Assembly (NCBI GenBank): GCA_002269645.1
Contig: NIVC01001125.1
Location: 1 to 26,701, forward strand
Direction of reading: 5' to 3'
Length of the DNA: 26,701 nt
Source: Macrostomum lignano
Taxonomy: Eukaryota
Every line of letters starts with the position of its first letter. Position 1 is the first letter of the stretch. This document shows, one piece after another, positions 5,688-25,180 of the stretch. The notes beneath the pieces are model-generated. The model saw only the letters and a program-made list of their open reading frames with translations, did not search any database and was not told the origin of the DNA. A program made the translations under genes and the position numbers.

Positions 5688-5927
5688 TGGATAGCTCGCT
5701 TGCTACGACTAGCTTGGTTGCTAGGGCCAGCTTGGTTGCTAAGGGTTCCTTGGTTGCTAAGGATATCTTGGTTGCTGGGGCCAGCTTGGTTGCTAAGGTT
5801 AGCTCGGTTGTTAAGGCTAGCTTGGTTGCTAGGGCCAGATAGGTTGCTAAAGCTAGCTTGGTTGCTAGGGCTATCTTGGTTGCTAGGGCCAGCTTGGTTG
5901 CTATGGCAGATAGCTCAGTTGCTAAGG
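5688..5927. repeat. ~18-bp GGTTGCTAGG-family minisatellite (copy 2)
   Basis: Repeated GCCAGCTTGGTTGCTA(A/G)G; same core as 3702-4262. Confidence 0.9.
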
Positions 5928-6342
5928 TGTCAGCATTAGCTTTGAATTTTTTATTGACAGAAAAATTATCCAATAGTTTCCATTACATGTAGATAGAGTT
6001 CCACTGTTACGCAAACACTAAATGTAGTTAATAATTAAAACAAAACTAAATTGCCTTTTGGCACTTTAAAGCAATAAAAAGTACTAATTAAAAGCACATA
6101 TTTTGTACGGTACATTAATAATCTATATTTAATCAAGCGGGAATTAGGATTCAAGAAATACGCAAAACTCTCAAGATAATATTTAAACAAAAAATGCCAA
6201 TATTAAAAGCAGACAATAACACTTTCCCAGTCCATTTTCCCATTTAAACATACTAATGAGAAAAAAACTACTAACAGTAGGCAAAATGAACAAGGCACCA
6301 CAAATTCGACAATAGATGACATTATACAGTACATCATATATT

Positions 6343-6348
6343 TTTATT
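6343..6348 (-). terminator. Probable polyadenylation signal of SLC33A1
   Basis: AATAAA on the minus strand about 95 nt after the TGA, followed by T/G-rich sequence. Confidence 0.6.
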
Positions 6349-6441
6349 AATTAAAACAAAACACAACAATCTCTTATTGGTTATCATGTGTCTTTGGAAT
6401 TCACATAGGAATGTCACAAACATACGAAGAAAAGTGAATTT

Positions 6442-6668
6442 TCACGTAACTTTCCAATGCTCCAACGGCAGAGACTCCAGACGCCTGAACGTGGCGCGAA
6501 TTCGCAGCAGAACCACAATGCCCAGGATGAAGCACAGGCCAGACTGGATGTAGTACCCATCCACTAGGGTGATGCAGGACGACTCAGACTCCAGGCTTGG
6601 GGTGCTGCACGACTTGATTGATATGTAGTCAACCACGAATAGCAGGAAAGTGACTGGAGCGCTGCCGG
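6442..6668 (-). CDS. SLC33A1: Acetyl-CoA transporter 1 (AT-1), last exon
   Basis: Acceptor tttcccctcag|CC; the phase-1 join gives TNL-A-GSAPVTFLLFVVDY...DGYYIQSGLCFILG, matching AT-1 NLGGNWP...DGYY; TGA at 6444-6442. Confidence 0.9.
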
Positions 6669-6819
6669 CTGAGGGGAAATATTTATTAACAATAGTTATG
6701 TATCTGCATAAAGCTTAAGCATTATTGTTCAAGAAATGTCTTATAAGGAAAAATAAGAAATAGAAAAGACTTCTGCTTGGATGAATTTTTGCTAAGGGAG
6801 GGATAATCAGTAGGTGGAC

Positions 6820-7395
6820 AACTCGGTTGCTAGGGATAGATTGATCGGTTACTGGGGCAAATAGTTGGATTGCTATGGATAGATATCTCGGTTGCTAGGG
6901 GGAGATACCACGGTTGCTAAGGGTAGATAACTTAATTGCTAGGCTTAGATAGTTCGGTAATTCGGTTGCTATGGGGTAGATACGAGCGTAAGCTTGGTTG
7001 CTAGGGCAAACAGTTGGGTTGGGTTGCTATAAAATTGGTATATCTATGGCTAGACAGCTCGGTTGGTAGGGGTAGATAGCTCGGTTGCTATCGATATATA
7101 GCTCGGTTGCTATGGATATATAGCTCGGTTGCTATGGATATATAGCTCGGTTGCTATGGATATATAGCTCGGTTGCTATGGATATATATAGCTCGGTTGC
7201 TATGGATATATAGCTCGGTTGCTATGGATATATAGCTCGGTTGCTATGGATATATAACTCGGTTGCTAGGGCGTAGTTAACTCAGTTGCTTGGGATTGAT
7301 AGCTCGGTTGCTAGGGTAGATAGCTATAGGTTGCTAGGAGTGGATAGCTCGGTTGCTAGGGCTAGACAGCTCGGTTGCTAAGGCTAGATAGCTTA
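6820..7395. repeat. ~20-bp GGTTGCT-family minisatellite (copy 3) in the last SLC33A1 intron
   Basis: Near-perfect TATATAGCTCGGTTGCTATGGA units at about 7080-7265 with degenerate flanks. Confidence 0.93.
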
Positions 7396-7486
7396 GGTAA
7401 GTGGGTTGGCTAAAATTGGTATATCTATAAATTTAGAACTCAAGAAGATTCCAATAAAATCAGAATCCAACATTCGACAGTCTCAC

Positions 7487-8117
7487 CTAGATTAGTAACG
7501 GTATTAAGCAGAGTCATATAAGTGCCGCCAACATTCGGATCGGACACTTTAGCGTGGAAAGCCATCTGAGACACGAACATGGCGTACATGAACACCTGAT
7601 GGGCCAGATAGGCAACGGTCACTAGCAGGAAATAGTGCCAAGGATAGCTGGCATCGTGGGCAGATTTAAACCGAGGCGTTATCCAAACTAAGCCGGCAAA
7701 CAGCAGGCCCAACAGCAGCCTGGGCAGGGCACTCTTTGTGTACAAAGACAATGGCCGATTGCCAACGTGTCTACTTAGCAGCACAGGCAGAACCAGTTGA
7801 AACGGCGTGACAACAACGCCTAAAAGTGCCAGACGTTCTTTCGGCACACCGGCTTCGATGAGTTTCAATCCGGTCATGCCGTCGGCGGCAGCGAAAGCCG
7901 ATTTCAACAGGCACAGGCAGAACAGGTACAGCAGGACTGGCCGCAGGCGCATGACCTTGGCTAGGATGGCATAGGTCTCCCTAACACCGAGATTGTCGTT
8001 ATCAACTTCCGAGCTGCTGTTACTGCTGCTAGTTGATTCTTCCCGACGGAATAGCAGGCAAAATGTGGTGCCAAGGAACACTAGGCCCCAGAAACGGAGG
8101 AAACCCGACAGGCTCAC
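7487..8117 (-). CDS. SLC33A1: Acetyl-CoA transporter 1, internal exon
   Basis: Acceptor cacacgcag|GTG; donor G|GTGAGA; encodes GLKLIEAGVPKERLALL and SQMAFHAKVSDPNVGGTYMTLLNTVTNL, both diagnostic AT-1 motifs. Confidence 0.95.
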
Positions 8118-8179
8118 CTGCGTGTGTGCAGTTTGGAGTCATACCGATATTTTATAGTTGGTATAAGCCGCTTTTAGCT

Positions 8180-8665
8180 ACGAGACTCTTAGAATGACTG
8201 TTTTGTATGAGCATCCTACAATGACCATTTTGTATGAGTCTTTTACAATGAGCGTCATGCATGATCCTCTTACAATGACCGTTTTGCATGAGCTCCTTGC
8301 AATGACCATTTCATATGAGTCTCTTAGAATGACGGTTTTACATGAGCTTTTGACAATGACCGTTTTATATGAGTCTTTTACAATGACCGACATGCACGAT
8401 CCTCTTAGCTCATACAATGATTTTTTTCTATGAGCTTCCTTAAATGACAGTTTTAATATGAGCCTCTTACAATAACCGTTTTGCATGAGCTCCTGGCAAT
8501 GACCCTTTTACATGAGCCTTTTACAATGACTGTCATGCATGATCCTCTTAGCTCGTAAGTCGTAAATGACATTTTTATATGATTCTCTGACAATGACGCT
8601 TGTTATGAAGATATGAGCCTTTTTTAGAAATGACTGTTTTGTGTGAGCCAGTTGCAATGAGAATT
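8180..8665. repeat. Degenerate ~30-bp minisatellite (TTGCATGAGCTCCTTACAATGACCGTT-like) in an SLC33A1 intron
   Basis: Repeated ATGAG...TTACAATGAC with a period of about 30. Confidence 0.88.
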
Positions 8666-8708
8666 TTGCACCTTTCCAATGAGTCTATTAAAAAAAGCGA
8701 TGACTCAC

Positions 8709-9161
8709 CAGACCAACAGGCTCAGGCCTGCTCCGCAGCCAGGTGTTGCAAAAGTCGGCCGACTCCAACGCCAGGAACAGCACGTAGGCAATGAAATAGC
8801 CGGCAGTCTGACCAACCGAGTTGCAACCGGATGCCCAAGCAACATTGCGCCTGCTCAGCATAGTCAGAGCCCAGCCGTCAACAGCAATGTCCTGCGTTGC
8901 GGCCAGGAATGTTAGGGAGAAAAATCCCGCCGCCAGAGGCAGAACTCGAACCGGCCCGGGCGGGTTCTCGCCCAACAGCCAGTCCGTGTAGCTGGCCAAT
9001 GTGGTCATAGCGGCCGCTAGGCCGAACTGCACCGGTATTAACCAGGACTTCCGGCGACCAAATCGAGCCGAGTAGATCGAATCCACCAGCGGTGCCCACA
9101 GTAGTTTGAGCGAGAATGGCCAGAATACGAAGGAAAATGTACCCTGAGCTGTGTAGCTCAC
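8709..9161 (-). CDS. SLC33A1: Acetyl-CoA transporter 1, internal exon
   Basis: Acceptor ccgcccag|GTG; donor CTG|GTGAGT; 453 nt, phase 0/0; encodes FSFVFWPFSLKLLWAPLVDS...GRRKSW...ATQDIAVDGWALTMLS. Confidence 0.96.
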
Positions 9162-9351
9162 CTGGGCGGCGTGCGGTTATGGGGGTTATTTGGCAAGAAA
9201 GTGTCATTGGATGTTAAAATGCTAAACATACCTGGCCAAAACCTTATCACGCTCAAAGCAATGGGGTCTAGTGGAGAGATTGAACAAACAAATAAAGTCT
9301 ATAATCACGCGTTTAGTAGACAAATGATCACATTCATTGGGATCTTATTAT

Positions 9352-9923
9352 TCCGGACAGAAAGTGTGAAGTCGTGAAGACTCTCTGGGCAGAAAGTGTG
9401 AAGTCGTGAAGACTCTGGGCAGAAAGTGTGAAGTCGTGAAGACTCTGGGCAGAAAGTGTGAAGTCGTGAAGACTCTGGGCAGAAAGTGTGAAGTCGTGAA
9501 GACTCTGGGCAGAAAGTGTGAAGTCGTGAAGACTCTGGGCAGAAAGTGTGAAGTCGTGAAGACTCTGGGCAGAAAGTGTGAAGTCGTGAAGACTCTGGGC
9601 AGAAAGTGTGAAGTCGTGAAGACTCTGGGCAGAAAGTGTGAAGTCGTGAAGACTCTGGGCAGAAAGTGTGAAGTCGTGAAGACTCTGGGCAGAAAGTGTG
9701 AAGTCGTGAAGACTGGGCAGAAAGTGTGAAGTCGTGAAGACTCGGGCAGAAAGTGTGAAGTCGTGAAGACTCTGGGCAGAAAGTGTGAAGTCGTGAAGAC
9801 TCTGGGCAGAAAGTGTGAAGTCGTGAAGACTCTGGGCAGAAAGTGTGAAGTCGTGAAGACTCCGGGCACAAAGTGTGAAGTCGTGAAGGCTCCGGACAGA
9901 AAGTGTGAAGTCGTGAAGACTCA
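9352..9923. repeat. Near-perfect 30-bp minisatellite GACTCTGGGCAGAAAGTGTGAAGTCGTGAA, about 19 copies
   Basis: Identical consecutive lines at 9421-9700 (two units per 60 nt). Confidence 0.98.

Positions 9924-9924
<1 letters not shown>

Positions 9925-9960
<36 letters not shown>
9925..9960. repeat. (GA)n microsatellite
   Basis: About 18 GA units abutting the 30-bp array. Confidence 0.95.
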
Positions 9961-10049
9961 TTGTGAAGGTGCAGTGTAGGGCTGATCACTGGGGCAACTT
10001 AGATCGCGAGAACCAGGATGATCTTGGTGAGAATCCGCAACTGCCTCAC

Positions 10050-10172
10050 CTTCCTAGCCGTGAGAATGTAGGGCACAGAGCCGGCCAGACCCAGCGGTAT
10101 GCCCTGCAGCACGTACAGAAATGTGAGCAACAGGACAGATCGCCGATCCTGCGAGCTCATCTCGCCTAGCGA
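10050..10172 (-). CDS. SLC33A1: Acetyl-CoA transporter 1, exon with the first TM helix (5' boundary uncertain)
   Basis: Encodes SVLLLTFLYVLQGIPLGLAGSVPYIL, matching AT-1 ILLLLFLYVLQGIPLGLAGSIP; donor AAG|GTGAGG is in phase with the next exon. Confidence 0.9.
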
Positions 10173-10243
10173 CTGAGCAGACAAGTCCCCATGCCAGCGG
10201 GGCCGCCTTCCACGCTCGGCTGATGAGGATTCGAGTTTTTCAC

Positions 10244-10516
10244 CGGCGAACGAGCCTGCCGTGCCTTCTTGAGCAGTTGAGCAGTTGACGAAGCGGCTTC
10301 GGCTTCTTCAGCTTCTGGCGATGTAGAAGTAGTGGATCCGCTGGAGTTGTCGGCCTCTTCAATATCGTTATCGTCTGTGAGATCTCCGCTAGTGTTGAGA
10401 GGCACTTGTGAGGGAATTTCTATGTCCAAGCTGAGTCCTTCCACTCGCTGTTGCTGCCTGCTGCTTGACCGGCTGTTGCCGGCGACACGACGCTGGCGGG
10501 TGGCTGGGGATGGCAT
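10244..10516 (-). CDS. SLC33A1: Probable N-terminal cytosolic tail of SLC33A1 (ATG at 10516)
   Basis: MPSPATRQRR resembles the AT-1 N-terminus (MSPT...RQRR). Joining to the TM1 frame needs a 71-nt intron (10243-10173) or an indel. The resulting ~568 aa fits the family size. Confidence 0.6.
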
Positions 10517-10529
10517 GCAAGGGAGTCAG

Positions 10530-11213
10530 GGGGGGGGCGGAATTGAGTTTAGGCGGGCGAAATCGAGTGTAAGGGGGGGGGCGGAATCGAGTCTAAGGGG
10601 GCGGAATCGAGTGTAGGGGGAGGGGCGGAATCGAGTGTAAGGGGGGCGGAATCGAGTGTAAGGGGGGCGGAATCGAGTGTAAGGGGGGGGCGGAATCGAG
10701 TGTAAGGGGGGCGGAATCGAGTGTAAGGGGGGAGGAATCGAGTGTAAGGGGGGAGGAATCGAGTGTTAGGGGGCGGAATCGAGTGTAAGGGGGGCGGAAT
10801 CGAGTGTTAGGGGCGGAATCGAGTGTAAGGGGGCGGAATCGAGTGTAAGGGGCGAGGAATCGAGTGTAAGGGGGGAGGAATCGAGTGTAAGGGGGGAGGA
10901 ATCGAGTGTTAGGGGGCGGAATCGAGTGTTAGGGGGCGGAATCGAGTGTAAGGGGGCGGAATCGAGTGTTAGGGGGCGGAATCGAGTGTAAGGGGGGCGG
11001 AATCGAGTGTAAGGGGGGGCGGAATCGAGTGTAAGGGGGCGGAATCGAGTGTAAGGGGGGCGGAATCGAGTGTAAGGGGGCGTAATTGAGTGTAAGGGGG
11101 GCGGAATCGAGTGTTAGGGGGCGGAATCGAGTATAAGGGGGGCGGAATCGAGTGTAAGGGGGGCGTAATTGAGTGTAAGGGGGGCGGAATCGAGTGTTAG
11201 GGGGCGGAATCAG
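10530..11213. repeat. ~21-bp G-rich minisatellite GGGGGCGGAATCGAGTGTAAG, about 32 copies
   Basis: Direct tandem periodicity with variable G-run length. Confidence 0.97.
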
Positions 11214-11749
11214 GTGTGCGACACAGTCAATACTAATAGATAGTGACATTTTACTATGATAAAATTTCTTTTAAAACCAAAAGTAGCATAAAAAGCAAGT
11301 CTAACAACAAAGTATACAAACACGCCATAATCACTGACAAAATACAACTTTTATTTTTACTTACTCTTCACAAGCAAATCGAGTTTACATTTTGGCATTT
11401 GGAACACACCTTGATAAGATATTTATTGAGATAAGAATTTAAACATTTCTGAGCGGGATTAACACAATAATTTTAGTTCATTAAGCTAAAAACTCTTTCT
11501 TTGTAAGCCAGATTACGTAAGTAAAATAAATTTAAGCAGTAAAGAATCATTTTTTTCAGAGCGATCAAAACGCTTGCATTAGCTATATATAATAGTACAT
11601 CACAACAGGAATGATTGGCTTTAGACAAAGTACAAGAATGTTGGCGCAAAAGCGCAGCCAACATGAGTGAAATTTATATTACGCGATCTTAAGTGCGCAT
11701 AAGCCTAAAATTAATTGCGAAAATTTATGTAACTCGCGAGCGAACCGGA

Positions 11750-12150
11750 GAACGAACAAACTTTGCAAGTTCCTGCGAACTGAAGTACTAGCAAACTTTT
11801 CAAGCTCTCGCGAACTGAAGTACAAGCGAACTTTTCAAGTTCTCGCAAACTGAAGTACAAGCGAACTTTTCAAGTTCTCGCAAACTGAAGTACTATCAAA
11901 CTTTTCAAGTTCTCGCGAACTGAAGTACTAGCAAACTTTTCAAGTGCTCGCGAACTGAAGTACTAGCAAAATTTTCTACTTCTCGCGAACTCAAGTACTA
12001 GCGAACTTTTCAAGTTCTCGCGAACTGAAGTACTAGCAAACTTTTACTTTTCTAGTTCTCGCGAACTGAAGTACTAGCGAACTTTTCAAGTGCTCGCGAA
12101 CTGAAGTATTTTAGAACTTTAAAAAGTACGCACGAACTTAACAAGTGCGA
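11750..12150. repeat. 35-bp minisatellite AACTTTTCAAGTTCTCGCGAACTGAAGTACTAGCA
   Basis: Units start at 11899 and 11934; about 11 copies; internal palindromes TCGCGA and AGTACT. Confidence 0.93.
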
Positions 12151-12204
12151 ATGAAGTAGCCAAAAAGTTAAACAGTACATTAGAACCGAAGTACCGGCGT
12201 ACTA

Positions 12205-13262
12205 TTAAGGCATCTGGGTAACGCTGATACACTCGCGCAACAGTCGCGGTACGGATGCTTCGGTCAAGTCTCTGGGCTGTTTATAAAGTACGCGCCGACG
12301 AACGTCTTCGTAGGCGAAGGGCAGCCGCAGCACCCAAAGGTCGCCGGGGCCAAGCGGAATCGGCTCTGGATTGCCGGGCAAGAACACCGGAGCAGCCGAG
12401 ACGGACGTCGCGGCCGATTCGCCGCCGGTTTCGGCTACAGCTGGCGCCGATGAGTCGGGCGACGGGGCAGCGAATCGAACTCGCGGATTGAGCCGAATCC
12501 GGACTGGAGCTTGAGGCGCAGCCACCCAGACTCGCATTAGCTGAGCAAATGCGCCTTTGGATTTGTGACAATGACACGGTATAAATAGCGGCAGATCTTC
12601 GCTAAGCAGCCGTTGAACTCCCTCCTTAACCTGGGTAGCTTGCATCGCGCCGCGCATCATCTGGCCGGGACTCGATACAAAAAATCGGTGCCCAAACGGG
12701 CACTCGTGCTCGAAGCCGAACCAAGCTTTGGCTGTTGGCTCGCGTCGAGTGCTTCGATATTGAGATGATTGCTGTTGTTGCTGCTGTTGCTGTTGCCACA
12801 GTTTACTGGCTACAGGTACATTCCAGGGCAGCAGGTGATTAGAGCCGCTAGAGAAGCCCGGCTGTCCAATACCGTTAGCGTGGCTGTAGCTGTTGTAGCG
12901 GCCAACAGACAGCAGGCACCAGCTTTGGACCAACGGCAGATAGCGGCCGATCAGGTCCTCGGTCATCATTCCTTTTAATTGCCGGATTGACACCTCAGTG
13001 TTATTCGATGCTGATAGCCCAGTCTCTTTAGGCGATTCAAGCTTCAAGCATTGCCGTTGTTTCCGCTTTAGATCTGCTTCTTCTTCTAATAATAATTGCT
13101 CATCTTCATCGTAGTTGCTGTGCTCGACGGCTAATGCTAGGGGAGTCCTGCTAGGCAATGTGGCTGACGGCTGGTCCAGCTCGACATCGTCCAACTCTGG
13201 ACTGCGCAGCGGCGGCAGCAGGTCGCCACTGTTCGACAGCTCCTCCGTGTACTGTGGCTGGG
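12205..13262 (-). CDS. SMG8: SMG8 nonsense-mediated decay factor, last exon (acceptor position inferred)
   Basis: WFGFEHECPFGHRFF...SEDLPLF...AQLMRVWVAAP...LWVLRLPFAY matches the SMG8 C-terminal domain; TAA at 12207-12205; phase-1 acceptor aacccgcag|CC. Confidence 0.9.
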
Positions 13263-13800
13263 CTGCGGGTTTATGGTGGGCGTGGCTGGGGGTTTATGGT
13301 GGGCGTGGCTGGGGGTTTATGGTGGATGTGGCTGGGGGTTTATGGTGGGTGTGGCTGGGGGCTTATGGTGGGTGTGGCTGGGAGTTTATGGTGGGTGTGG
13401 CTGGGGGTTTATGGTGGGTGTGGCTGGGGGTTTATGGTGGGTGTGGCTGCGGGTTTATGGTGGGTGTGGCTGCAGGTTTATGGTGGGTGTGGCTGCGGGT
13501 TTATGGTGGGTGTGGCTGCGGGTTTATGGTGGGTGTGGCTGGGGGTTTATGGTGGGTGTGGCTGGTTTATGGTGGGTGTGGCTGGGGGCTTATGGTGGGT
13601 GTGGCTGGGGGTTTATGGTGGGTGTGGCTGGGGGTTTATGGTGGATGTGGCTGCGGGTTTATGGTGGGTGTGGCTGGGGGTTTATGGTGGGTGTGGCTGG
13701 TTTATGGTGGGTGTGGCTGCAGTTTTATGGTGGGTGTGGCTGCGGGTTTATGGTGGGTGTGGCTGCGGGTTTATGGTGGGTGTGGCTGAGGGTTTGTGGG
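13256..13800. repeat. 23-bp minisatellite GTGGCTGGGGGTTTATGGTGGGT (with 20-bp deletion variants)
   Basis: About 24 tandem units; the source of the MVGVAGG-type ORFs. Confidence 0.97.
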
Positions 13801-13811
13801 TAAGATTAGCT

Positions 13812-14052
13812 GTCTGATGATTTAATATTTGGTGTCTGATGGGGTGAGAATAGATTTCTGATGGGTGAGATTAGATTTTCCATGGGGTGAGATTAGATGT
13901 CTGATGGGATGATATTAGATTTCTAATGGGGTGAGATTAGACGTCTGATGGGGTGAGATTAGACGTCTGATGGGGTGAGATTAGGTGTCTAGTAAGGTGA
14001 GATTTAATGCCTAAATAACGAGGGAGATTAAGCATCTAGTGGGTGAGATTCA
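13812..14052. repeat. Degenerate 22-bp minisatellite GATGGGGTGAGATTAGACGTCT
   Basis: Units start at 13926 and 13948. Confidence 0.88.
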
Positions 14053-14123
14053 TGCTTTAGACAAAGCTAACAGTGATTACAATTAGAGCTTTAATGTGAG
14101 CTAGGTCGATACAATATACACAC

Positions 14124-14641
14124 TTTTATCCTCGGAGCCTCTCCGCTGATAGACTGGCAGAGGCACAGGCTGGTGCTGGCCGCAGCAGCTGTCAATCAGA
14201 CGGCTATAAAAGTGCACATTGGCCTCCTCCCAGTTGAAAGGATCTGGTCGGCTTTCCAACAGTCGGCCGCACGAGCAGGCGGCCCGCATCGATGTGTAAG
14301 CTGACGAATGCGGCATCGCCGGCAGCTGCTGCTGCTGATCAGCCGAGGTGCCGGGCAGGCTGTGCCGCTCGTTAACGCACGGATGCGAGGTGACGCTCAG
14401 GGCTTCGCACATCTGCCGGCCGGACAGCCAGACGCTGTTGCAGCGAGCCTCCAATTCAGCCAGGTATTTATCGGCTGCCGGGCCTCGGGCATTGTCTAGG
14501 AACACCTGCTGGGCCTTGCGAATGCGCTCGGTGTGCACCCGATGGCTGTAGTGGGCTGGCAGGCCCTCGCGATAGACGGACTCGGCCAGTGGCAGGGCGC
14601 TGGCGCACCGGGTCTCCGAGAATTTGCGCACAATGTCGCAC
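14124..14641 (-). CDS. SMG8: SMG8 exon 4
   Basis: Acceptor cacttccag|G; encodes KFSETRCASALPLA...ARGPA...W.SGRQMCE..S.T.H.C...CSCGR...RPDPF...AN, conserved in SMG8; donor A|GTGTGT inferred. Confidence 0.9.
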
Positions 14642-14687
14642 CTGGAAGTGAAGGGGAGATTAAGGGTGATTAAGCGTTCTTCAGACG

Positions 14688-15048
14688 CCCCAGCAACTGA
14701 GGATCTAAGAGGTTAAAGCTGACCAAGCAACTGAGGATCTGGGAGGCTGACCCAGCTACTGACACTCTGGGAGGCTGGCCCAGCAACTGAGGATCTGGGA
14801 GGCTGGCCCAGCTACTGAGGATCTGGGAGGCTGACCCAGCAACTGAGGATCTGGGAGGCTGACCCAGCAACTGAGGATCTGGGAGGCTGGCCCAGCAACT
14901 GAGGATCTGGGAGGCTGACCCAGCAACTGAGGATCTGGGAGGCTGGCCCAGCAACTGAGGATCTGGGAGGCTGACCCAGCAACTGAGGATCTGGGAGGCT
15001 GGTCCAGCAACTGAGGATCTGGGAGGCTGACCCAGCAACTGAGGATCG
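14688..15048. repeat. 28-bp minisatellite GGGAGGCTGACCCAGCAACTGAGGATCT
   Basis: Units start at 14881, 14909 and 14937. Confidence 0.96.
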
Positions 15049-15111
15049 GTAGTGACACAAGCAACTCCAGAGGGTGAATAAACACATACTCATGACCATT
15101 ATCCAACTCAC

Positions 15112-15509
15112 CTAGCCTTGAACTCGTTCATAACCCTCTGCACGCCTGGGTCTAGATCCGTAAGCAGCAGTTTGTGCAGCTTGTGGCAGACTTTAAACCA
15201 GCTCTTGGCCGAGACCAGATCCAGCGGGCCGCCGCCAACGCCGCCCTCAGCCTCCGCCTGGTTCATGTGCCGTTCGAGGAATCTGGCGAATTCCCGATTG
15301 TACGAACCGCCCGTCAGCGACTGCATGAATTCATTATCCAACAGTTGATCGTCTGTTAAGTCTACGGGGTCGTCCAGCTCTAGCAGAGACTGAAAGACGC
15401 CAGACGGCGAGGCTGGTGCAGGCGGGCTGACGCAGCAGAATCCGCCGTCTGGTAGACGGCACAAGTTGCCGGCCTCGGGGCCCGTGATGAGTTTTGCGCG
15501 GCGGAATAT
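15112..15509 (-). CDS. SMG8: SMG8 exon 3
   Basis: Acceptor cgcccgcag|ATA; the join CQIYQ|IFRRAKLIT matches SMG8 EDQIYRIFRKSRVLT; donor AG|GTGAGT is phase 2 and matches the next exon. Confidence 0.9.
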
Positions 15510-15559
15510 CTGCGGGCGTGGAGGCAGTGCAGGGGCGGGTTATGGGTACCTGCTGGGGC

Positions 15560-16365
15560 GGGTTCTAATTGGGGTGGATTCTAATTGGGGTGGGTTCTAA
15601 TTAGGGCGGATTCTAATTGGGGTGGATTCTAATTGGGGTGGGTTCTAATTGGGGTGGGTTCTAATTGGGGTGGATTCTAATTGGGGTGGGTTCTAATTGG
15701 GGTGGGTTCTAATTGGGGTGGGTTCTAATTGGGGTGGATTCTAATTGGGGTGGGTTCTAATTGGAGTGGATTCTAATTGGGGTGGGTTCTAATTAGGGCG
15801 GATTCTAATTGGGGTGGATTCTAATTGGGGTGGGTTCTAATTGGGGTGGGTTCTAATTGGGTAGGTTTTAACTGGGGTGGGTTCTAATTGGGGTGGGTTC
15901 TAATTAGGGCGGATTCTAATTGGGGTGGGTTCTAATTGGGGTGGATTCTAATTGGGGTGGGTTCTAATTAGGGCGGATTCTAATTGGGGTGGATTCTAAT
16001 TGGGGTGGGTTCTAATTGGGGTGGGTTCTAATTGGGTAGGTTTTAACTGGGGTGGGTTCTAATTGGGGTGGGTTCTAATTAGGGCGGATTCTAATTGGGG
16101 TGGGTTCTAATTGGAGTGGATTCTAATTGGGGTGGATTCTAATTGGGGTAGGTTCTAACTGGGGTGGGTTCTAATTGGGGTGGGTTCTAATTGGGTAGGT
16201 TTTAACTGGGGTGGGTTCTTATTGGGGTGGGTTCTAATTGGGGTGGGTTCTAATTGGGGTGAATTCTAATTAGGGCGGATTCTAATTGGGGTGGGTTCTA
16301 ATTGTGGTGTGTTTTAAATTGGGGTGAAATTGGGGTGGATTCTAACTGGGTAGGCTCTAAATAGG
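15560..16365. repeat. 16-bp G-rich minisatellite TTCTAATTGGGGTGGG, about 48 copies
   Basis: Direct 16-bp periodicity with recurring TTAGGGCGGA and GGGTAGGTTTTAAC variant units. Confidence 0.97.
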
Positions 16366-16420
16366 ACTAAATCAGCTAGCGACTGAATCAGAGTGTCGCT
16401 TTAAATAAAAAATGCTCCAC

Positions 16421-16663
16421 CTGATAAATCTGGCACTGCAAGCTATCAGCCAGAGCTCGTTGGTGACCGCCGTCAATTAGCTGCTTAGTAAGATTGCCCG
16501 GACTCAGTTGGAAATGGAATAGCACAGCCGGGCATGAGGTCCGACCATTCAGAGTCCAATCTCGGGGCACAGGGAACGAGCGATAGGCCTGGCACAGTTG
16601 GCCCAGCAACTGCTGACGCAGCTGAGACACCAGCTGTAGGGTTCGAGTTACTGCCGGATTCAC
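16421..16663 (-). CDS. SMG8: SMG8 exon 2
   Basis: Acceptor cttcgcag|GTG; donor CAG|GTGGAG; 243 nt; PVPRDWTLNGRTSCPAVLFHFQL matches SMG8 PVGKDWKLNCRPCPPRLLFLFQL. Confidence 0.9.
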
Positions 16664-16715
16664 CTGCGAAGTTGCAAAGGGATAATTGAGTAATTAATAC
16701 GAGCTAATTAACTGG

Positions 16716-17342
16716 ACTTCCGGAGTTAAAAAAGATCCCATCGATCCCACTGAACCGGAAATATCGAATTTTCCTGGACTTTGAAGATCCCATCGATCCC
16801 ACTGAACCGGAAGTATCGAATTTTCCATAACTTTGAAAATCCCAACGATCCCACTGAACCGGAAGCATCGAATTTCCCTGAACTTTGAAGATCCCATCGA
16901 TCCCACTGAACCGGAAGTATCGAATTTTCCATAACTTTGAAAATCCCATCGATCCCACTGAACCGGAAGTATTGAATTTCAATAAACTTTGAAGATCCCA
17001 TCGATCCCACTGAACCGGAAGTATCGAATTTTCCATAACTTTGAAAATCCCATCGATCCCACTGAACCGGAAGTATTGAATTTCCCTGAACTTTGAAGAT
17101 CCCATCGATCCCACTGAACCGGAAGCATCGAATTTCCCTGAACTTTGAAGATCCCATCGATCCCACTGAACCGGAAGTATCGAATTTTCCATAACTTTGA
17201 AAATCCCATCGATCCCACTGAACCGGAAGTATTGAATTTCCCTGAACTTTGAAGATCCCATCGATCCCACTGAACCGGAAGTATCGAATTTTCCATAACT
17301 TTGAAAATCCCATCGATCCCACCGAACCGGAAGTTGGAAAAT
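16716..17342. repeat. 52-bp minisatellite TCCCACTGAACCGGAAGTATCGAATTTTCCATAACTTTGAAAATCCCATCGA, about 12 copies
   Basis: Units start at 16901 and 16953; two roughly alternating variants (CATAAC..AAAAT and CTGAAC..AAGAT). Confidence 0.96.
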
Positions 17343-17351
17343 CCAACCAAC

Positions 17352-17906
17352 CTGAGTCCCAATACAGTTGAACACAACAACATGCGACACGGAGAACAGG
17401 TATAGCAAAGCTCTGATGTTATCAAAATCGGCCGCAGTCAGCATAGCGGCAACATTAGGCGTGTCCGGATTAAGATCTCGGACAAAAGCGGCGTACAGGT
17501 GAGCTAAATGAGCCGGGTCATTCGGTCCGGTTAAGCTTAGAAACACGGCCCGCTTTTCTGGGCTGTAGAATCCGTGCAGCCTGACCAGCTGCTGCTGATC
17601 AGATGCCGACTTATCGGCGGTACTATCGACATCGTCCGCCACTGTAGCACCGTCGCTTTCAAAACCATAGCCTAGCAACGGCGGTTGAAACGCCGGCCTA
17701 TCTAATAACTGCAGTTCCAATTGTAGAGTTTTGCTGGGACACAACCTGGGATCGGACCGGCCAACAAAAGCCACTACGCGAATTCGCGTATCGCGTCGGG
17801 ATAAACGATTGAAGTCGAAGTTCGGGGGCAAGGGGAACCAGCCGGGTTGGCAGGCTGGTTGAGACCTCTGCTGATGCTGCTCATGGTGATGATGCTGATA
17901 GTGCCT
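17352..17906 (-). CDS. SMG8: SMG8 first recognisable exon (5' end uncertain, no in-frame ATG)
   Basis: IRVVAFVGRS...LLYLFSVSHVVV matches the SMG8 N-terminal G-fold; donor CAG|GTTGGT; frame open back to a TGA at 17924-17922. Confidence 0.8.
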
Positions 17907-17984
17907 CTGAGTATCCAGAAATCAATGCATCAGCGATTTAAAAAAAGCATATGAAAAGACTTAAGACATTAAGGAATTGAAAGG

Positions 17985-18510
17985 AGTGGCCTAGGAGTGT
18001 CTTAGGAGTGACCCACCAGAGAAACAGGTGTCTTAGGAGTGATCCACTTGAGGAATCAGTGGCTTAGGAGTGACCCTCTTGAGGAATCAGTGGCTTGGGA
18101 GTGACTCACTTGAGGAATCAGTGGCTTAGGAGTGACCCACTTGAGGAATCAGTGGCTTAGGAGTGACTCATTTGAGGAATCAGTGGCTTAGGAGTGACCC
18201 GCTTGAGGAATCAGTGGCTTAGGAGTGACCCGCTTGAGGAATCAGTGGCTTAGGAGTGACCCGCTTGAGGAATCAGTGGCTTGGGAGTGACCCGCTTGAG
18301 GAATCAGTGGCTTAGGAGTGACCCGCTTGAGGAATCAGTGGCTTGGGAGTGACTCACTTGAGGAATCAGTGGCTTGGGAGTGACTCACTTGAGGAATCAG
18401 TGGCTTGGGAGTGACTCACTTGAGGAATCAGTGGCTTAGGAGTGACACACTTGAGGAATCAGTGGCTTAGGAGTGACCCACTAGATACTGATGTGTTAGC
18501 TAATCGTAGG
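17985..18510. repeat. 31-bp minisatellite GGCTTAGGAGTGACCCACTTGAGGAATCAGT
   Basis: Units start at 18061 and 18092; about 15 copies. Confidence 0.96.
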
Positions 18511-19004
18511 AGTGACCTGTATGCATACGTATAAACTGATTATCTAAGTAGCAAGACATAACTAAAAATAAGCGAGAACTAGCAAAAAATAAATTGTGTG
18601 CCTTTATTTCAAACATTATCAGTTTTAGTAGTTTATACAGGTAAGCAATTAAAAAATAAGGACATGATAACTACGCAGCATATTATTTAATACAAAATTA
18701 TAGTTAGCTACTATGCACAATAAGCAATAACCTGAAAATTTAACCGAGATTAAAACAGGCATAACAGATAAAATGTATAGATGTACAAATATGCACACAT
18801 GTCACGCTTTTAAACAATAAAGACATTTTATAGTGCACGCAGGCAATAAAATGCACTGTAACAAAGGACAAATACAACAAAACTGTGTTAACTGTCTTTG
18901 TTAAACCTGTTTTATGAATGGATAGCACTTTTAAGTAAATATCAAGTACATTTGAATGACGGTAAAGGAATGAGGGCTGTATAACGGTAGATAAGAGTAG
19001 ATTA

Positions 19005-19378
19005 TTAGGGTAGCTTAAGGGTAGATGATTAGGGTAGCTTAAGGGTAGATGATTTGGGTAGCTTAAAGGTAGATTATTTGGGTAGCTTAAGGGTAGATGA
19101 TTTGGGTAGCTTAAGGGTAGATGATTTGGGTAGCTTAACGGTAGATGATTAGGGTAGGTTAAGGGTAGATGATTTGGGTAGCTTAAGGGTAGATGATTAG
19201 GGTAGCTTAAGGGTAGATGATTTGGGTAGCTTAAGGGTAGATGATTTGGGTAGCTTAACGGTAGATGATTAGGGTAGGTTAAGGGTAGATGATTAGGGTA
19301 GCTTAAGGGTAGATGATTTGGGTAGCTTAACGGTAGATTATTAGGGTAGATTAACGGTAGAGGGTAGCTTAACCTCAA
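19005..19378. repeat. 24-bp minisatellite GGGTAGCTTAAGGGTAGATGATT(A/T)
   Basis: About 15 tandem units; the source of the LSYPNHLP ORF. Confidence 0.96.
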
Positions 19379-19902
19379 CGTTAGAGGATTAAGGCAGCTT
19401 AAAAGACAGAACTATTGCATCTGATCGATAGGTTAGAAAGGTAGATCGATAGGTTAGCATGAAAATTTATTAAAAAAACGGTAACTGCAAAGGTAGATAG
19501 GTAAATAGTGAATAAATTTTAGTGCATGCAGGTTTATTCTTACTCATATTTTCGTTTTATAGCATGAGTAAATGTTAAACTGACTGCTCAAAACTTGTCG
19601 TGCAAAGTACTCACATCTCGTGCCAAATACATAACTTCGTATATACATATAGCGACGGAATAGCAACATACTTAAAACACAAGTATTAAAGTATGCAGCA
19701 CTTTTTTGAACGCAACAACCTACAAGAGCATCGAATAATGTAGCATGATATGAAAAATGAAAATAACATATGAAAATAGACGAATTAAAATAGCTGCCAA
19801 TGCAGTGCTGATTGCTAGGACCAGATTAAAGTTACTTGAAAATTGACATCTTTTTACTTTATTTATTATTTGATTATTAGACAGACAGGGTTGATGGGCC
19901 AT

Positions 19903-20240
19903 TCTAGAGTGAGGTTGGAGGGCGGTTCCAGAGTGGGGTTGGAGGGCGGTTCTAGAGTGGGGTTGGAGGGCGGTTCTAGAGTGGGGTTGGAGGGCGGTTC
20001 TAGAGTGGGGTGGGATGGCGGTTCTAGAGTGGGGTTGGAGGGCGGTTCTAGAGTGGGGTTGGAGGGCGGTTCTAGAGTGGGGTGGGATGGCGGTTCCAGA
20101 GTGGGGTTGGAGGGCGGTTCTAGAGTGGGGTTGGAGGGCGGTTCTAGAGTGGGGTTGGAGGGCGGTTCTAGAGTGGGGTTGGAGGGCGGTTCTAGAGTGG
20201 GGTTAGAGGGGATTCTAGAGTGAAGTTGGAGGGCGACTCT
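19903..20240. repeat. 24-bp minisatellite TCTAGAGTGGGGTTGGAGGGCGGT
   Basis: About 13 tandem units; the source of the GSRVGLEG ORFs. Confidence 0.96.
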
Positions 20241-20344
20241 AAAACAATTTTGATAGTTTAACATTAGTTTGAGATTAGTAAACAACATGAGTACATCTCT
20301 GCTTAGCTTAAATGGACAAATGACTAGCGTTAATTACATAAGAA

Positions 20345-22374: not shown

Positions 22375-22864
22375 ATGCTCTGGAAGCAGCAGCCGCAGCA
22401 GCAGCAGCAGTCTGGAATTGCCGAGATAATACAAGAAAGTCTACGCAAATCGTCTATACGCGGCCTGCCAAGAATACTAGGCGCCAAGTCTCGCCTCATG
22501 CGCGGCTTTTGGACAGCTACAGTGTTAATATTGTTCGCCTGTCTGGCGCAGAACATACACAACTTAGTTGACTCTTACAGACGAGCCGACACAATAATTA
22601 ATACAAAACAGTGGACGTCGCAGGATAGACAGTTTCCAACTGTGACCATTTGCAATTTAAACCCATTTTCAGCATCGAATCGATTGGTAAAACAGAGAGG
22701 CAGCCTGACTCCATCAGAGTATAGAGACAGAGTCATTCACATGACAAAAGAGGCCAATAGACGAGGACTTATTGACAAGGAAGAGATGGACTTATACCAG
22801 GACGAGCTGCTCAATCTTAAAGCGTACTACGACAACATCGATGTCTACTTGAAGAAGTACATGG
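22375..22864 (+). CDS. DEG/ENaC (ASIC/FaNaC-like) channel subunit, exon 1
   Basis: SSIRGLPRI...FW.....L (pre-TM1/TM1) and FPTVTICNLNPF signature; donor G|GTAAGC. Confidence 0.92.
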
Positions 22865-22958
22865 GTAAGCAATTGATGTTATTTCAACCTACATGCAAAG
22901 TTAGTTTGCTATGGACGCTCTTAGTGAAGACAATATTGTACAATCGCACTTCACACAG

Positions 22959-23333
22959 AAAGCTATCCGCTGATCCTGTCAAAGAGTTGCAAAATCTATT
23001 ATCGCAAGGGCAACGTACGCAAAAGTCGAAAATGTGACAGCATCGAGAGAAGCTACGTATTTGACTATACCAACTGCTACTCTGTAAATGTCTACAGCAC
23101 AAAAGACGAACTAGTTGAGAAAGTTGTTATTAGCACTCTGACACACTCTGAGGACGAAGGCGTCAAGTGCAGTCGCTGCATAGTGGATAATCCGCAGTCT
23201 CTGAGACAAGGAGTTATAATGCATCTGCATCCGCACAATCAATACCCGCTGTACATTAAAGAGGGTCTGTACATAGCGCCTGGCACGCAAAATATTATTC
23301 AGGTGAAGCAACGAAAGTACAATCTTATCAAAG
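22959..23333 (+). CDS. DEG/ENaC channel subunit, exon 2
   Basis: Acceptor ttcacacag|AA (phase 1); open frame with TNCYS and GVIMHLHPHNQYP..KEGLYIAPG; donor G|GTAAGT. Confidence 0.9.
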
Positions 23334-23487
23334 GTAAGTTTGCAAGCTGCACCGATAATTTTAATGCTACTATGTATTGCCACAACATTGCTCTATCGCA
23401 TCAGTATAAAAAAAGTAAATTTGAAGAGACTCGTTGAATCCCTGCTATTTTTGTGATTTTACAATAACAAAATCTTCACTCTTACAG

Positions 23488-23926
23488 ACTGCAGCACGGA
23501 CCACCCAACCTGGGTGCATTTCTACGTTAACGACGCTAAAAAAAGTAGTCACCATACTAGAGAACTGTGCAGCACTATAGCTAAACACGCGGCGGTGAAA
23601 CGAGCTTGTAATTGTTCAATCGAAGCGTTTCCACATTTATCAGCTCGTAAAAATCAATACGATTCCTGCTACCAACAGAATCTTAGCTCTCCAGTTATCA
23701 ATACTAAACTATTAGACTGCGTAGCGGATATAGAAGGTCGGCATCATCAAACATGTGGATCAACAGCAGCTACGGAGGCCGACACAATTTCTGGGAAAAA
23801 CTGTGCGCGACCTTGTAACACCGAGGATTTCAGCGTTGCGCACACTTCAACACTAGGCGCAACAAAAGGCAGCGCGTTGGATATCTATCGGCACTATATT
23901 AGAGGTGTGGTTAATATACCTAGCAA
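23488..23926 (+). CDS. DEG/ENaC channel subunit, exon 3 (Cys-rich thumb)
   Basis: Acceptor ctcttacag|AC; encodes C...ACNC...C...C...C...CARPCNTEDF; donor AA|GTGAGT. Confidence 0.9.
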
Positions 23927-24029
23927 GTGAGTATTCAAGTGAAACTTGTTTTTTTAGTAATTATATAGACCTTCATAAGTGCAATGCAGAAATTTACAAA
24001 TTTGTAGACAGAATTTGTCTTTCATTCAC

Positions 24030-24570
24030 ACAGCAGTCTCTCGATCTCTGCCTTCATTCAAACTGTAGACTCTGGACCTCTGCCTTCATTCAGACTAGTC
24101 TCAGGATCTCTGCCTTAATTCAGACTGTAGTCTTAAGATCTATGCCTTCATTCAGACTGTAGTCTCAGGATCTCTGCCTTCATTCAGACTGTAGTCTCAG
24201 GATCTCTGCCTTCATTCAGACTGTAGTCTCAGGATCTCTGCCTTCATTCAGATTGTAGTCTCAGGATCTCTGCCTTCATTCAGACTGTAGTCTCAGGATC
24301 TCTACCTTCATTCAGACTGTAGTCTCAGGATCTCTGCCTTCATTCAGACTGTAGTCTCAGGATCTCTGCCTTCATTCAGACTGTAGTCTCAGGATCTCTG
24401 CCTTCATTCAGACTGTAGTCTTAAGATCTATGCCTTCATTCAGACTGTATTCTCTGGACTATGCCTTCAATAAGACTGTAGTCTCTGGATCTGTGCCTTC
24501 ATTCAGACTGTAGTCTCTGGATCTCTGCCTTCATTCAGACTGTAGTCTCTAGAGCTCTGCCTTCACTCAG
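24030..24570. repeat. 32-bp minisatellite TCTCTGCCTTCATTCAGACTGTAGTCTCAGGA in channel intron 3
   Basis: About 16 units, each containing the small inverted repeat AGACT-GT-AGTCT. Confidence 0.96.
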
Positions 24571-24699
24571 ATAGCATAAAAAATCAGTAGATTAGGGACT
24601 AGGTTAACTGTTAACACGATTTCCTAAAATATTTCCTGAAGACAGATTTTTTCAATGCCACTACATTTAGCGTCTTCATGACACGCATCTCTATACCAG

Positions 24700-25180
24700 A
24701 TTCCGAAGCATCTACGACGCAGCGCTGCTCGCCCGCGAGGCAAACAACGACACATTAGCCATGCAGCTCGTATCGAAGACGGATTATCTCGAGCGCAATT
24801 TTGCCACAATGGTACTGATGTACATACCAAATCATGCCAAAGTGTACACAGAAAGCTATTTATTAGATTCGGCTTCGTTTGTTAGTCAAGTCGGCGGAGC
24901 GATGGCGCTATTCAGCGGCATAACACTAATTTGCATTGCCGAAGTGTTCGAAGTTATTTACGATTTAATAGCTTACGCCTATTGGCGACATAAACTTGGT
25001 AGGCAAGGTGGAGTTCAAACTTCAATTACTACTAACGCGAGTAGTGCAACAACAGCAAGATCAGCAACTGGTAATAATGTTAGAATCATTCACGCCAATT
25101 TTAACTGTCACAATTCTACTAGCAATAATAACAGATTGTTGCGAGTGCCAGTTCAATTTAACAGATTGGACGAATTATAG
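24700..25180 (+). CDS. DEG/ENaC channel subunit, exon 4 (TM2 and C-terminus)
   Basis: Acceptor ctctataccag|A (phase 2); encodes FVSQVGGAMALFSGITLICIAEVFE (TM2); TAG at 25178-25180. The four exons total 1785 nt = 594 aa plus stop. Confidence 0.92.

What the first reader, a model, noticed from the sequence alone, without database searches (positions are those of the whole stretch)
17774..17960. SMG8 has no usable in-frame ATG; a spliced-leader AUG would fit exactly
The first in-frame ATG (17444) lies downstream of the conserved VVAFVGRS motif. Upstream, the only in-frame ATG (17930) is closed at once (ATG CAT TGA). A T-rich tract leads to ...ggatactcag|AGG CAC TAT, a phase-0 acceptor at 17907. 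Flatworm spliced leaders characteristically end in AUG, which can act as initiator (established for Schistosoma), so trans-splicing here would give M-RHYQHHHHEQ... in frame. Alternatives are a distant cis exon, or a missing C in the CCCC at 17835-17832 that would place ACCATGA (17884) in frame. As assembled, that ATG opens a 36-aa out-of-frame ORF ending at 17774.
Basis: partly seen in the sequence, partly recalled or inferred. Interest (0 to 1): 0.7.

Follow-up and report, generated by a model that had tools for sequence, protein, structure and literature searches.

The report
SMG8 start codon supplied by spliced leader
This flatworm (Macrostomum lignano) SMG8 gene has no start codon of its own ahead of its conserved domain and most likely borrows the AUG that ends the trans-spliced leader RNA, a mechanism already known in flatworms, so the case is tidy but ordinary.

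Summary
On the minus strand the SMG8 frame opens after TGA (17924-17922). It has no in-frame ATG until 17444, which is codon 151 and lies past the conserved VVAFVGRS motif.

The window is the whole GenBank scaffold NIVC01001125.1 of Macrostomum lignano. That species has a 35-nt spliced leader (SL) ending in ATG.

GenBank annotates this gene (PAA71948.1, 919 aa, "partial") from 17894, the base right after ctatCAG. The two other genomic copies start at the same base. The annotation pipeline cut genes at peaks of SL-containing reads and trimmed the SL. A 5'-partial CDS starting exactly after a CAG is what an SL-AUG-initiated mRNA would look like there.

The main acceptor is probably 17895|17894, giving M-HHHHEQ..., not 17907|17906, giving M-RHYQ.... 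Both are in frame.

The indel alternative is disfavoured. All three copies share the same C-runs, and the assembly was Illumina- and RNA-seq-polished.

One new detail: codon 17918-17916 is CTG here but an in-frame ATG in the other two copies. It lies upstream of either acceptor.

I could not see any SL-junction read. The mechanism is known from Schistosoma (Cheng et al. 2006), so interest is modest.

The parts
17940..17946 (-). Run of seven T upstream of the acceptors (pyrimidine tract of the outron)
   Evidence: Read directly from the sequence. Identical in the three copies.
17922..17930 (-). In-frame ATG CAT TGA. The TGA (17924-17922) is the last in-frame stop upstream of the SMG8 reading frame.
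17916..17918 (-). In-frame CTG in this copy. The two other genomic copies have ATG here (L001 9977-9979). It lies in the outron if either acceptor is used.
   Evidence: Three-copy alignment; flanks printed
17907..17909 (-). It is the first AG after the T-run. The annotation does not use it.
17895..17897 (-). CAG acceptor immediately before the annotated CDS start. Most likely the SL trans-splice site (17895|17894), phase 0.
   Evidence: GenBank CDS of PAA71948.1 starts at 17894 (L003 position 8808 maps to window 17894). The context ctatcag|CATCAT is the same in all three copies.
17352..17894 (-). SMG8 exon 1, 181 codons, HHHHEQ...CIGTQ, donor CAG|gttggt
   Evidence: Pfam PF10220 model positions 2-114. 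Codon-usage log-likelihood of codons 1-150: +19 in frame 0 against -43 and -62 in the other frames.
17774..17884 (-). Out-of-frame (+1) ORF of 36 codons plus stop, starting at accATGa. It would be the second AUG of the trans-spliced mRNA, at nt 46.
17832..17835 (-). Same length in all three copies.
17754..17777 (-). Conserved VVAFVGRS motif at the start of the Smg8_Smg9 domain
17442..17444 (-). First in-frame genomic ATG (codon 151 of the annotated CDS). Older UniProt models begin here (MLTAADF...).
16421..16663 (-). SMG8 exon 2
   Evidence: the exon set translates exactly to P0004
15112..15509 (-). SMG8 exon 3
14124..14641 (-). SMG8 exon 4
   Evidence: Pfam
12205..13262 (-). SMG8 exon 5, ending in TAA at 12207-12205
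   Evidence: Pfam
17898..20344 (-). Region between the stop of the upstream same-strand BRPF-like gene (20345) and the acceptor. It holds the presumed outron and/or promoter, three minisatellites and several AATAAA signals.

Best explanation
The SMG8 pre-mRNA of Macrostomum lignano is SL trans-spliced at the CAG acceptor 17897-17895. The 35-nt spliced leader ends in AUG and is joined directly to CAU CAU CAC CAU at 17894. The SL's terminal AUG is then the only in-frame start codon ahead of the conserved N-terminal domain.

It initiates a 920-aa protein, M-HHHHEQHQQRSQPAC..., from a 32-nt 5' UTR. The genomic locus needs no ATG of its own.

**Shown here**
- The frame and the ATG map.
- The identity of the organism and the scaffold.
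- The annotated CDS boundary, identical in three copies.
- The match of the exon model to the GenBank protein.

**Taken from the literature**
- The SL sequence.
- How the annotation boundaries were made.
- The SL AUG acting as initiator in Schistosoma.

**Inferred**
- That this boundary is an SL-read peak.
- That ribosomes start at the SL AUG on this mRNA.
For: 1. No genomic in-frame ATG lies between TGA 17924-17922 and 17444. Starting at 17444 would remove 150 codons, including Pfam PF10220 model positions 2 to about 95.
2. The window is scaffold NIVC01001125.1 of M. lignano assembly GCA_002269645.1. Its protein PAA71948.1 is flagged 'partial' and starts with HHHH at 17894, directly after ctatCAG with no partial codon before it. 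My five-exon model reproduces that protein exactly.
3. The copies on NIVC01002461.1 and NIVC01000699.1 are annotated from the same base. This holds even though both carry an in-frame ATG 24 nt upstream, which any longer transcript would have captured as a complete ORF.
4. The annotation was built by mapping SL-containing reads after trimming the SL. Transcriptional units were cut at those peaks (the TBONE pipeline), and ORFs were then called with TransDecoder (PMC5730564).
5. The M. lignano SL ends in ATG, and 30-39% of genes are trans-spliced (PMC8629364 and PMC5730564). Authors of Macrostomum genome papers treat the final ATG as a translation start codon (PMC10468722).
6. Joining the SL to 17894 or to 17906 puts the SL ATG in frame 0 with no stop before the conserved domain.
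7. [quoted passage not shown] 2006, as cited in PMC9851317). All reported flatworm SLs end in ATG (PMC12582326).
8. The gene is intact and constrained. Window against L001 shows 17 synonymous and 9 non-synonymous changes, dN/dS about 0.17, and no indels.
Against: - No SL-junction read, cDNA or peptide was seen. The junction scan of the one nucleotide collection I could search found nothing, and no supplement lists this gene.
- A 'partial' flag alone is not proof. The neighbouring Acatn gene in L001 is also 5'-partial, yet does not start right after an AG.
- The SL AUG has a weak context (ugcAUGc). An out-of-frame AUG in a better context (accAUGa) follows 13 nt later, so initiation at the SL AUG may be inefficient.
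- Neither acceptor matches the enriched [T/C]TNCAG motif perfectly.
- Changes among the copies upstream of codon 151 are mostly non-synonymous: 5 non-synonymous to 2 synonymous, against 5 to 16 downstream. Fisher p = 0.063, not significant.
- No orthologous N-terminus outside M. lignano could be retrieved for comparison.
Confidence: 0.8

Rival explanations
1. A cis-spliced upstream exon supplies the ATG. The same acceptor (17895 or 17907) would be joined to a short 5' exon in the 2.4-kb upstream region. The best candidate is ATG TAT TTG GCA CGA GAT|gtgagt at 19632-19615, phase 0. This could be the main isoform or an alternative one.
For: Of 23 ATG-to-GT phase-0 candidates, one has a consensus GTGAGT donor. 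It is intact in all three copies. Parasitic flatworms share many acceptors between cis- and trans-splicing (PMC12582326).
Against: The transcript-based annotation has no such exon in any of the three copies and leaves the CDS 5'-partial. Conservation around the candidate is no higher than the intergenic background of about 1-4 differences per 100 nt. About six GTRAG sites occur in this region anyway, so one falling in phase is unremarkable.
Confidence: 0.07
2. Non-trans-spliced transcripts are translated from the genomic codon at 17918. In the other two copies it is ATG, giving M-DTQRHYQHHHH.... In this copy it is CTG, so this copy would rely on near-cognate initiation or be poorly translated.
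For: There is an in-frame ATG at the homologous position in L001 and L002, two codons after the TGA. CTG is the most efficient near-cognate start codon (general knowledge).
Against: All three copies are annotated from HHHH. A transcript reaching that ATG would have given a complete ORF in L001 and L002. Upstream ATGs at 17950 and 17930 would act as short upstream ORFs (uORFs). The CTG context is poor, tttCTGg. The ATG/CTG difference itself suggests the codon is not constrained.
Confidence: 0.05
3. The real start is the internal ATG at 17444. Exon 1 upstream of it would be a 5' UTR, or a decaying remnant, giving an N-terminally truncated SMG8. Older gene models assumed this.
For: UniProt models A0A1I8IP95 and A0A1I8JJ99 start at MLTAADF. 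There is a slight excess of non-synonymous differences upstream of codon 151 (p = 0.063).
Against: The 150 upstream codons are open in all three copies. They carry Pfam Smg8_Smg9 homology from model position 2 (E = 6e-10). They show coding-type codon usage only in this frame. Six out-of-frame ATGs (17884, 17668, 17632, 17521, 17455 and the SL's own) would precede 17444 on the mRNA.
Confidence: 0.05
4. There is an assembly indel. A base is missing in a C-run (17835-17832), which would put ATG 17884 in frame.
For: Single-base run-length differences between copies do exist in this assembly. One example is GGGG against GGGGG in the neighbouring Acatn gene.
Against: Both C-runs are identical in three separately assembled copies that differ by nearby SNPs. 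The assembly was Pilon-polished with Illumina DNA and RNA-seq reads. The GenBank CDS keeps the as-assembled frame.
Confidence: 0.02

Closest known systems
Flatworm SL 3'-terminal AUG used as initiator methionine (Schistosoma mansoni; Cheng, Cohen, Ndegwa & Davis, J Biol Chem 2006; called 'slORFs' in PMC9851317)
   Same: The SL ends in AUG. The acceptor is in phase 0, so the SL AUG reads straight into the ORF. The mature mRNA has no other usable in-frame AUG. The gene looks 'start-less' in genomic DNA.
   Different: This is a different flatworm lineage: free-living Macrostomorpha with its own 35-nt SL. Use of the SL AUG has not been shown experimentally in this species or for this gene. Here it is inferred from the annotation boundaries.
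SL trans-splicing in Macrostomum lignano (Wasik 2015; Grudniewska 2016, 2018; Wudarski 2017; Ustyantsev & Berezikov 2021)
   Same: Same organism, same assembly and same SL. The gene is a conserved housekeeping-type gene, the class reported as enriched among trans-spliced genes. The upstream same-strand neighbour lies at a repeat-adjusted distance of about 1.1-1.2 kb, close to the 1-kb operon threshold used there.
   Different: The papers I read do not analyse genes that depend on the SL ATG for initiation. In GenBank, SL trimming leaves such genes labelled 'partial'.
SMG8 (Pfam PF10220; human SMG1-SMG8-SMG9 complex, PDB 6L54, 6SYT)
   Same: Homology runs along the whole protein, including the N-terminal VVxxxG motif region.
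   Different: The N-terminus is His/Gln-rich (MHHHHEQHQQ) with no counterpart in the Pfam model. Exon 1 is the least conserved part.

Membership tests
SL-AUG-initiated ORF (flatworm slORF, sensu Cheng et al. 2006) | The organism has a spliced leader whose last three bases are AUG | tested here: met
   The organism was identified as M. lignano. The SL sequence ending in ATG comes from PMC8629364 and PMC10468722. The SL RNA gene itself is not in the window.
SL-AUG-initiated ORF (flatworm slORF, sensu Cheng et al. 2006) | The mRNA is actually trans-spliced at the proposed acceptor | tested here: inconclusive
   Support is indirect. The GenBank 5'-partial CDS starts at the first base after CAG in all three copies, and the annotation pipeline cuts genes at SL-read peaks. 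No SL-junction read was seen.
SL-AUG-initiated ORF (flatworm slORF, sensu Cheng et al. 2006) | The SL AUG is in frame with the conserved ORF, with no stop in between | tested here: met
   In-silico junctions at 17894 and 17906 both give frame 0 and an open frame.
SL-AUG-initiated ORF (flatworm slORF, sensu Cheng et al. 2006) | No other in-frame AUG on the mature mRNA upstream of essential conserved sequence (the SL AUG is required) | tested here: met
   The next in-frame ATG is 17444, codon 151, downstream of Pfam model positions 2 to about 95.
SL-AUG-initiated ORF (flatworm slORF, sensu Cheng et al. 2006) | Translation starts at the SL AUG | not testable with these tools
   This needs ribosome profiling, N-terminal proteomics or a reporter assay.
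SMG8 (PF10220 Smg8_Smg9) | Significant match to the family profile along the protein | tested here: met
   Exons 1, 2, 4 and 5 hit PF10220 at E = 6e-10, 1e-6, 2e-47 and 6e-54, collinear over model positions 2-872. Human SMG8 (6L54_B) matches at E = 6e-47.
Operon-internal (downstream) gene resolved by SL trans-splicing | Same-strand upstream gene at a repeat-adjusted distance below 1 kb (criterion of PMC8629364) | tested here: inconclusive
   From stop 20345 to acceptor 17895 is 2450 nt. About 1205 nt of that is tandem repeat, leaving about 1.2 kb before subtracting the unknown 3' UTR. This is borderline.

The most novel reading that the evidence does not exclude
The three genomic copies may capture a hand-over of the start codon from the gene to the spliced leader. 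An in-frame genomic ATG sits just upstream of the trans-splice acceptor in two copies. In this copy it has become CTG without harm, because the SL AUG now initiates.

In addition, the weak-context SL AUG is followed 13 nt later by a strong-context out-of-frame AUG opening a 36-codon overlapping ORF. That arrangement could make output of this NMD factor depend on leaky scanning, and possibly on NMD itself.
Probability: 0.15. Interest if true: 0.55.

Novelty: new member of a known kind. Interest (0 to 1): 0.3.

Why it matters
**Biology.** If confirmed, production of full-length SMG8, a regulator of the NMD kinase SMG1, would depend strictly on SL trans-splicing in this stem-cell model flatworm.

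**Annotation.**
- Pipelines that trim the whole SL, including its ATG, leave such genes flagged 'partial' in GenBank. Here all three SMG8 copies are flagged that way.
- Ab initio predictors fall back on an internal ATG. The UniProt models of about 600-650 aa lack 150 N-terminal residues.
- Restoring the SL ATG in frame would complete this protein. The same may apply to other 'partial' M. lignano genes, but I did not survey them.

The mechanism itself has been known since 2006, so a specialist would not be surprised.

Tried and rejected
- **Orthologous N-termini.**
  - A word-index protein search with exon 1 found nothing.
  - The full HMMER scan of 1.84 billion representatives found only the truncated M. 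lignano model plus low-complexity noise.
  - The full-length search returned only M. lignano proteins.
  - No cross-species comparison of the N-terminus was therefore possible.
- **Direct junction evidence.** A scan of metagenome contigs for SL 3' end + 0-12 nt + CATCATCACCATGAGCAG gave 0 hits. The protein cluster holds no member that starts with M followed by HHHH.
- **Gene lists.** Supplements of PMC8629364, PMC5816591 and PMC5730564 hold no entry for Mlig033894, Mlig002965 or SMG8.
- **PDB search with exon 1.** It hit only a His-tagged unrelated protein, which is uninformative.
- **Conservation as a test of the candidate upstream mini-exon.** The copies are too similar, and the background is 1-4 differences per 100 nt everywhere.
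- **SL RNA gene in the window.** Absent, as expected.
- **Homopolymer-indel idea.** Rejected.
- **Window copy as a pseudogene.** Rejected. The CDS is intact, with dN/dS about 0.17.

Full report
**What is in the sequence**

The gene lies on the minus strand. Read downward from 17960, the SMG8 frame gives ATG CAT TGA (17930-17922), then TTT CTG GAT ACT CAG | AGG CAC TAT CAG | CAT CAT CAC CAT GAG .... It continues open through RIRVVAFVGRS (VVAFVGRS = 17777-17754) to a donor CAG|gttggt at 17352.

I listed every minus-strand ATG between the stop of the upstream gene (20345) and the end of exon 1. All in-frame ATGs upstream of the exon are closed by a stop. The last is 17930, closed at 17924-17922. 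The next in-frame ATG is 17444.

The ATG at 17884 is in frame +1 and opens a 36-codon ORF ending with TAG at 17776-17774.

**What the gene is and where the window comes from**

Exon 1 and three downstream open stretches hit Pfam PF10220 (Smg8_Smg9) collinearly over model positions 2-872, with E-values from 6e-10 to 6e-54. Human SMG8 from the SMG1-8-9 structures matches at 6e-47.

A search with my provisional full-length model found three Macrostomum lignano clusters at 91-99% identity. The best cluster holds three 919-aa GenBank proteins, all flagged "partial". One of them, PAA71948.1 (BOX15_Mlig033894g1), sits on a contig of exactly 26,701 bp. Looking it up returned the window itself: NIVC01001125.1 of assembly GCA_002269645.1 (Mlig_3_7).

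The five minus-strand exons are:

| Exon | Window coordinates |
|---|---|
| 1 | 17894-17352 |
| 2 | 16663-16421 |
| 3 | 15509-15112 |
| 4 | 14641-14124 |
| 5 | 13262-12205 |

These exons translate exactly to that GenBank protein.

The neighbours on the same strand are a BRPF-like bromodomain/PWWP gene upstream, with its stop at 20345, and an acetyl-CoA transporter gene downstream.

**The key new fact**

It begins 12 nt further on, at 17894 (CAT CAT CAC CAT = HHHH). That is the base immediately after a second phase-0 CAG (ctatCAG, 17897-17895), with no partial codon before it.

The other two genomic copies are L001 on NIVC01002461.1 and L002 on NIVC01000699.1. Both are annotated from exactly the same base.

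The annotation was built as follows, according to the genome paper. [quoted passage not shown] Transcriptional units were cut at those peaks by the TBONE pipeline to define mature mRNA 5' ends. ORFs were then called with TransDecoder (PMC5730564).

A TransDecoder 5'-partial ORF starts at the first codon of the transcript. The frame stays open upstream as far as 17921. A transcript beginning at 17906 or beyond would therefore have been annotated from RHYQ or earlier. In L001 and L002 it would have been annotated from a complete ATG (see below). The simplest reading is that the mature, SL-trimmed mRNA starts at 17894.

**Why the SL supplies the start codon**

- The single M. lignano SL is CGGTCTCTTACTGCGAAGACTCAATTTATTGCATG, 35 nt, ending in ATG. 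It is found on 30-39% of genes (PMC8629364; PMC5730564).
- Authors of other Macrostomum genome papers state that the final ATG is likely a translation start codon (PMC10468722).
- All reported flatworm SLs end in ATG (PMC12582326).
[quoted passage not shown] 2006, as summarised in PMC9851317).

Joining the SL in silico to 17894 gives AUG CAU CAU CAC CAU GAG = M-HHHHEQHQQRSQPAC..., 920 aa, with a 32-nt 5' UTR. Joining it to 17906 gives M-RHYQHHHHEQ.... Both are in frame.

**The alternatives**

*Homopolymer indel.* Both C-runs (CCCC 17835-17832 and CCCCC 17828-17824) are identical in the three copies. The copies are distinguishable by nearby SNPs, so they were assembled separately. The assembly was polished with Pilon using Illumina DNA and RNA-seq reads. 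Run-length differences between copies do occur elsewhere: GGGG against GGGGG in the neighbouring gene. The agreement here is therefore informative.

*Internal ATG 17444.*
- Starting there would remove 150 codons that carry Pfam homology from model position 2.
- Those codons are open in all copies.
- They show coding-like codon usage only in this frame, +19 against -43 and -62 log2 units.
- The excess of non-synonymous differences among the copies upstream of codon 151 (5 to 2, against 5 to 16 downstream) is not significant (p = 0.063). It fits the lower conservation of this part of SMG8.
- Older UniProt models that start at MLTAADF show what gene predictors do when they find no ATG.

*Upstream cis exon.* Of 23 ATG-to-GT phase-0 candidates in the 2.4-kb upstream region, only one has a consensus donor: ATG 19632 ... 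GAT|gtgagt 19615. It is intact in all three copies. Conservation there is no better than background, and the transcript-based annotation has no such exon. Flatworm acceptors are often shared between cis- and trans-splicing, so a minor cis isoform cannot be excluded.

*Genomic codon 17918.* This copy has CTG. L001 and L002 have an in-frame ATG at the same position, two codons after the TGA and 24 nt upstream of the annotated start. If that ATG were on the mature mRNA, L001 and L002 would have been annotated as complete ORFs, and they are not. It lies in the outron for either acceptor. The ATG/CTG difference between otherwise constrained copies (dN/dS about 0.17, no indels) suggests the codon is dispensable.

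**What remains uncertain**

- I could not see an SL-junction read, a cDNA or a peptide. The searchable collections do not hold M. lignano transcript data, and the supplements I could read do not list the gene.
- A "partial" flag alone is not diagnostic. The Acatn gene in L001 is also 5'-partial but does not begin after an AG.
- The SL AUG is in a weak context (ugcAUGc). It is followed at mRNA nt 46 by an out-of-frame AUG in a better context (accAUGa) that opens the 36-codon ORF. Leaky scanning could lower SMG8 output. Whether that is regulatory is speculation.
- Whether SMG8 is the downstream gene of an operon is borderline. The repeat-adjusted distance is about 1.1-1.2 kb against the 1-kb criterion.

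**Comparison with the known, and verdict**

This works like the Schistosoma SL-AUG initiator genes. It meets the sequence-level criteria I could test: an SL ending in AUG, an in-frame junction, and no other usable AUG. Trans-splicing at this site is supported only through the annotation. Translation from the SL AUG is untested.

It is a new instance of a known mechanism, in a species where the papers I read have not analysed SL-AUG-dependent genes. The interest is modest. The practical value is for annotation: restoring the SL ATG would turn this 'partial' protein into a complete one, and possibly others that I did not survey.

Noticed in passing
window 17916-17918 (minus); L001 9977-9979; L002 same column: Start-codon polymorphism between genomic copies. 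There is an in-frame CTG here and an ATG in the two other copies, just upstream of the trans-splice acceptors and two codons after the in-frame TGA.
   Followed up: partly
window 10160-10516 (minus); L001 16146-16600: The downstream acetyl-CoA transporter (Acatn/SLC33A1) gene differs between copies. The window has ATG 10516 but a G-run of 4 (10189-10186) against 5 in L001. That closes the N-terminal extension at 10166, so the annotated CDS starts at ATG 10160 (473 aa). L001 has CTG in place of that ATG, stays in frame, and is annotated as 5'-partial with 586 aa. This could be a real frameshift or an assembly error.
   Followed up: partly
window 22375-25180 (+): Exons of a DEG/ENaC (Pfam PF00858, amiloride-sensitive sodium channel) gene lie on the opposite strand, nested inside an intron of the BRPF-like bromodomain/PWWP gene (exons at 26596-25853 and 20824-20345, minus).
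   Followed up: partly
window 1-3163: A (GAGGA)n microsatellite of about 634 units forms the first 3.2 kb of the scaffold, with GC skew about 1.0. It probably explains why the scaffold ends there.
   Followed up: no
window 3731-20235, many sites (e.g. 16732-17334, 15554-16326, 13254-13799, 17996-18482): Almost every intron and intergenic stretch holds a 16-52-bp minisatellite of 10-50 copies. The 52-bp array in SMG8 intron 1 stays open in frame with exon 1, so mechanical ORF lists run through it (375-aa ORF 16704-17831). Array lengths differ between the three genomic copies.
   Followed up: partly
L002 10001-15228 compared with window and L001: The SMG8 copy on NIVC01000699.1 is a mosaic. Exons 1-2 share variants with L001, while exons 3-5 are identical to the window copy. 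This could be recombination or gene conversion between copies, or a chimeric haplotype assembly.
   Followed up: no
window 19615-19632 (minus): ATG TAT TTG GCA CGA GAT|gtgagt is the only ATG-bearing phase-0 mini-exon candidate with a consensus donor in the upstream region. A TATA-like TATATGTATATA lies just upstream of it. It could equally mark the promoter or outron start.
   Followed up: partly
proteins P0002, P0003, P0006, P0007 (UniProt A0A1I8IP95, A0A1I8JJ99 and others): Older M. lignano SMG8 models in UniProt start at the internal Met (MLTAADF, window 17444). Some carry mis-spliced segments. They are 596-646 aa against the 920 aa expected.
   Followed up: yes
proteins P0008, P0009 in the cluster of P0001: Two unrelated-looking 50-aa metagenome proteins (MLWYFGRGESKL...) are filed in the same 90% cluster as the SMG8 proteins. 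This looks like a clustering artefact.
   Followed up: no
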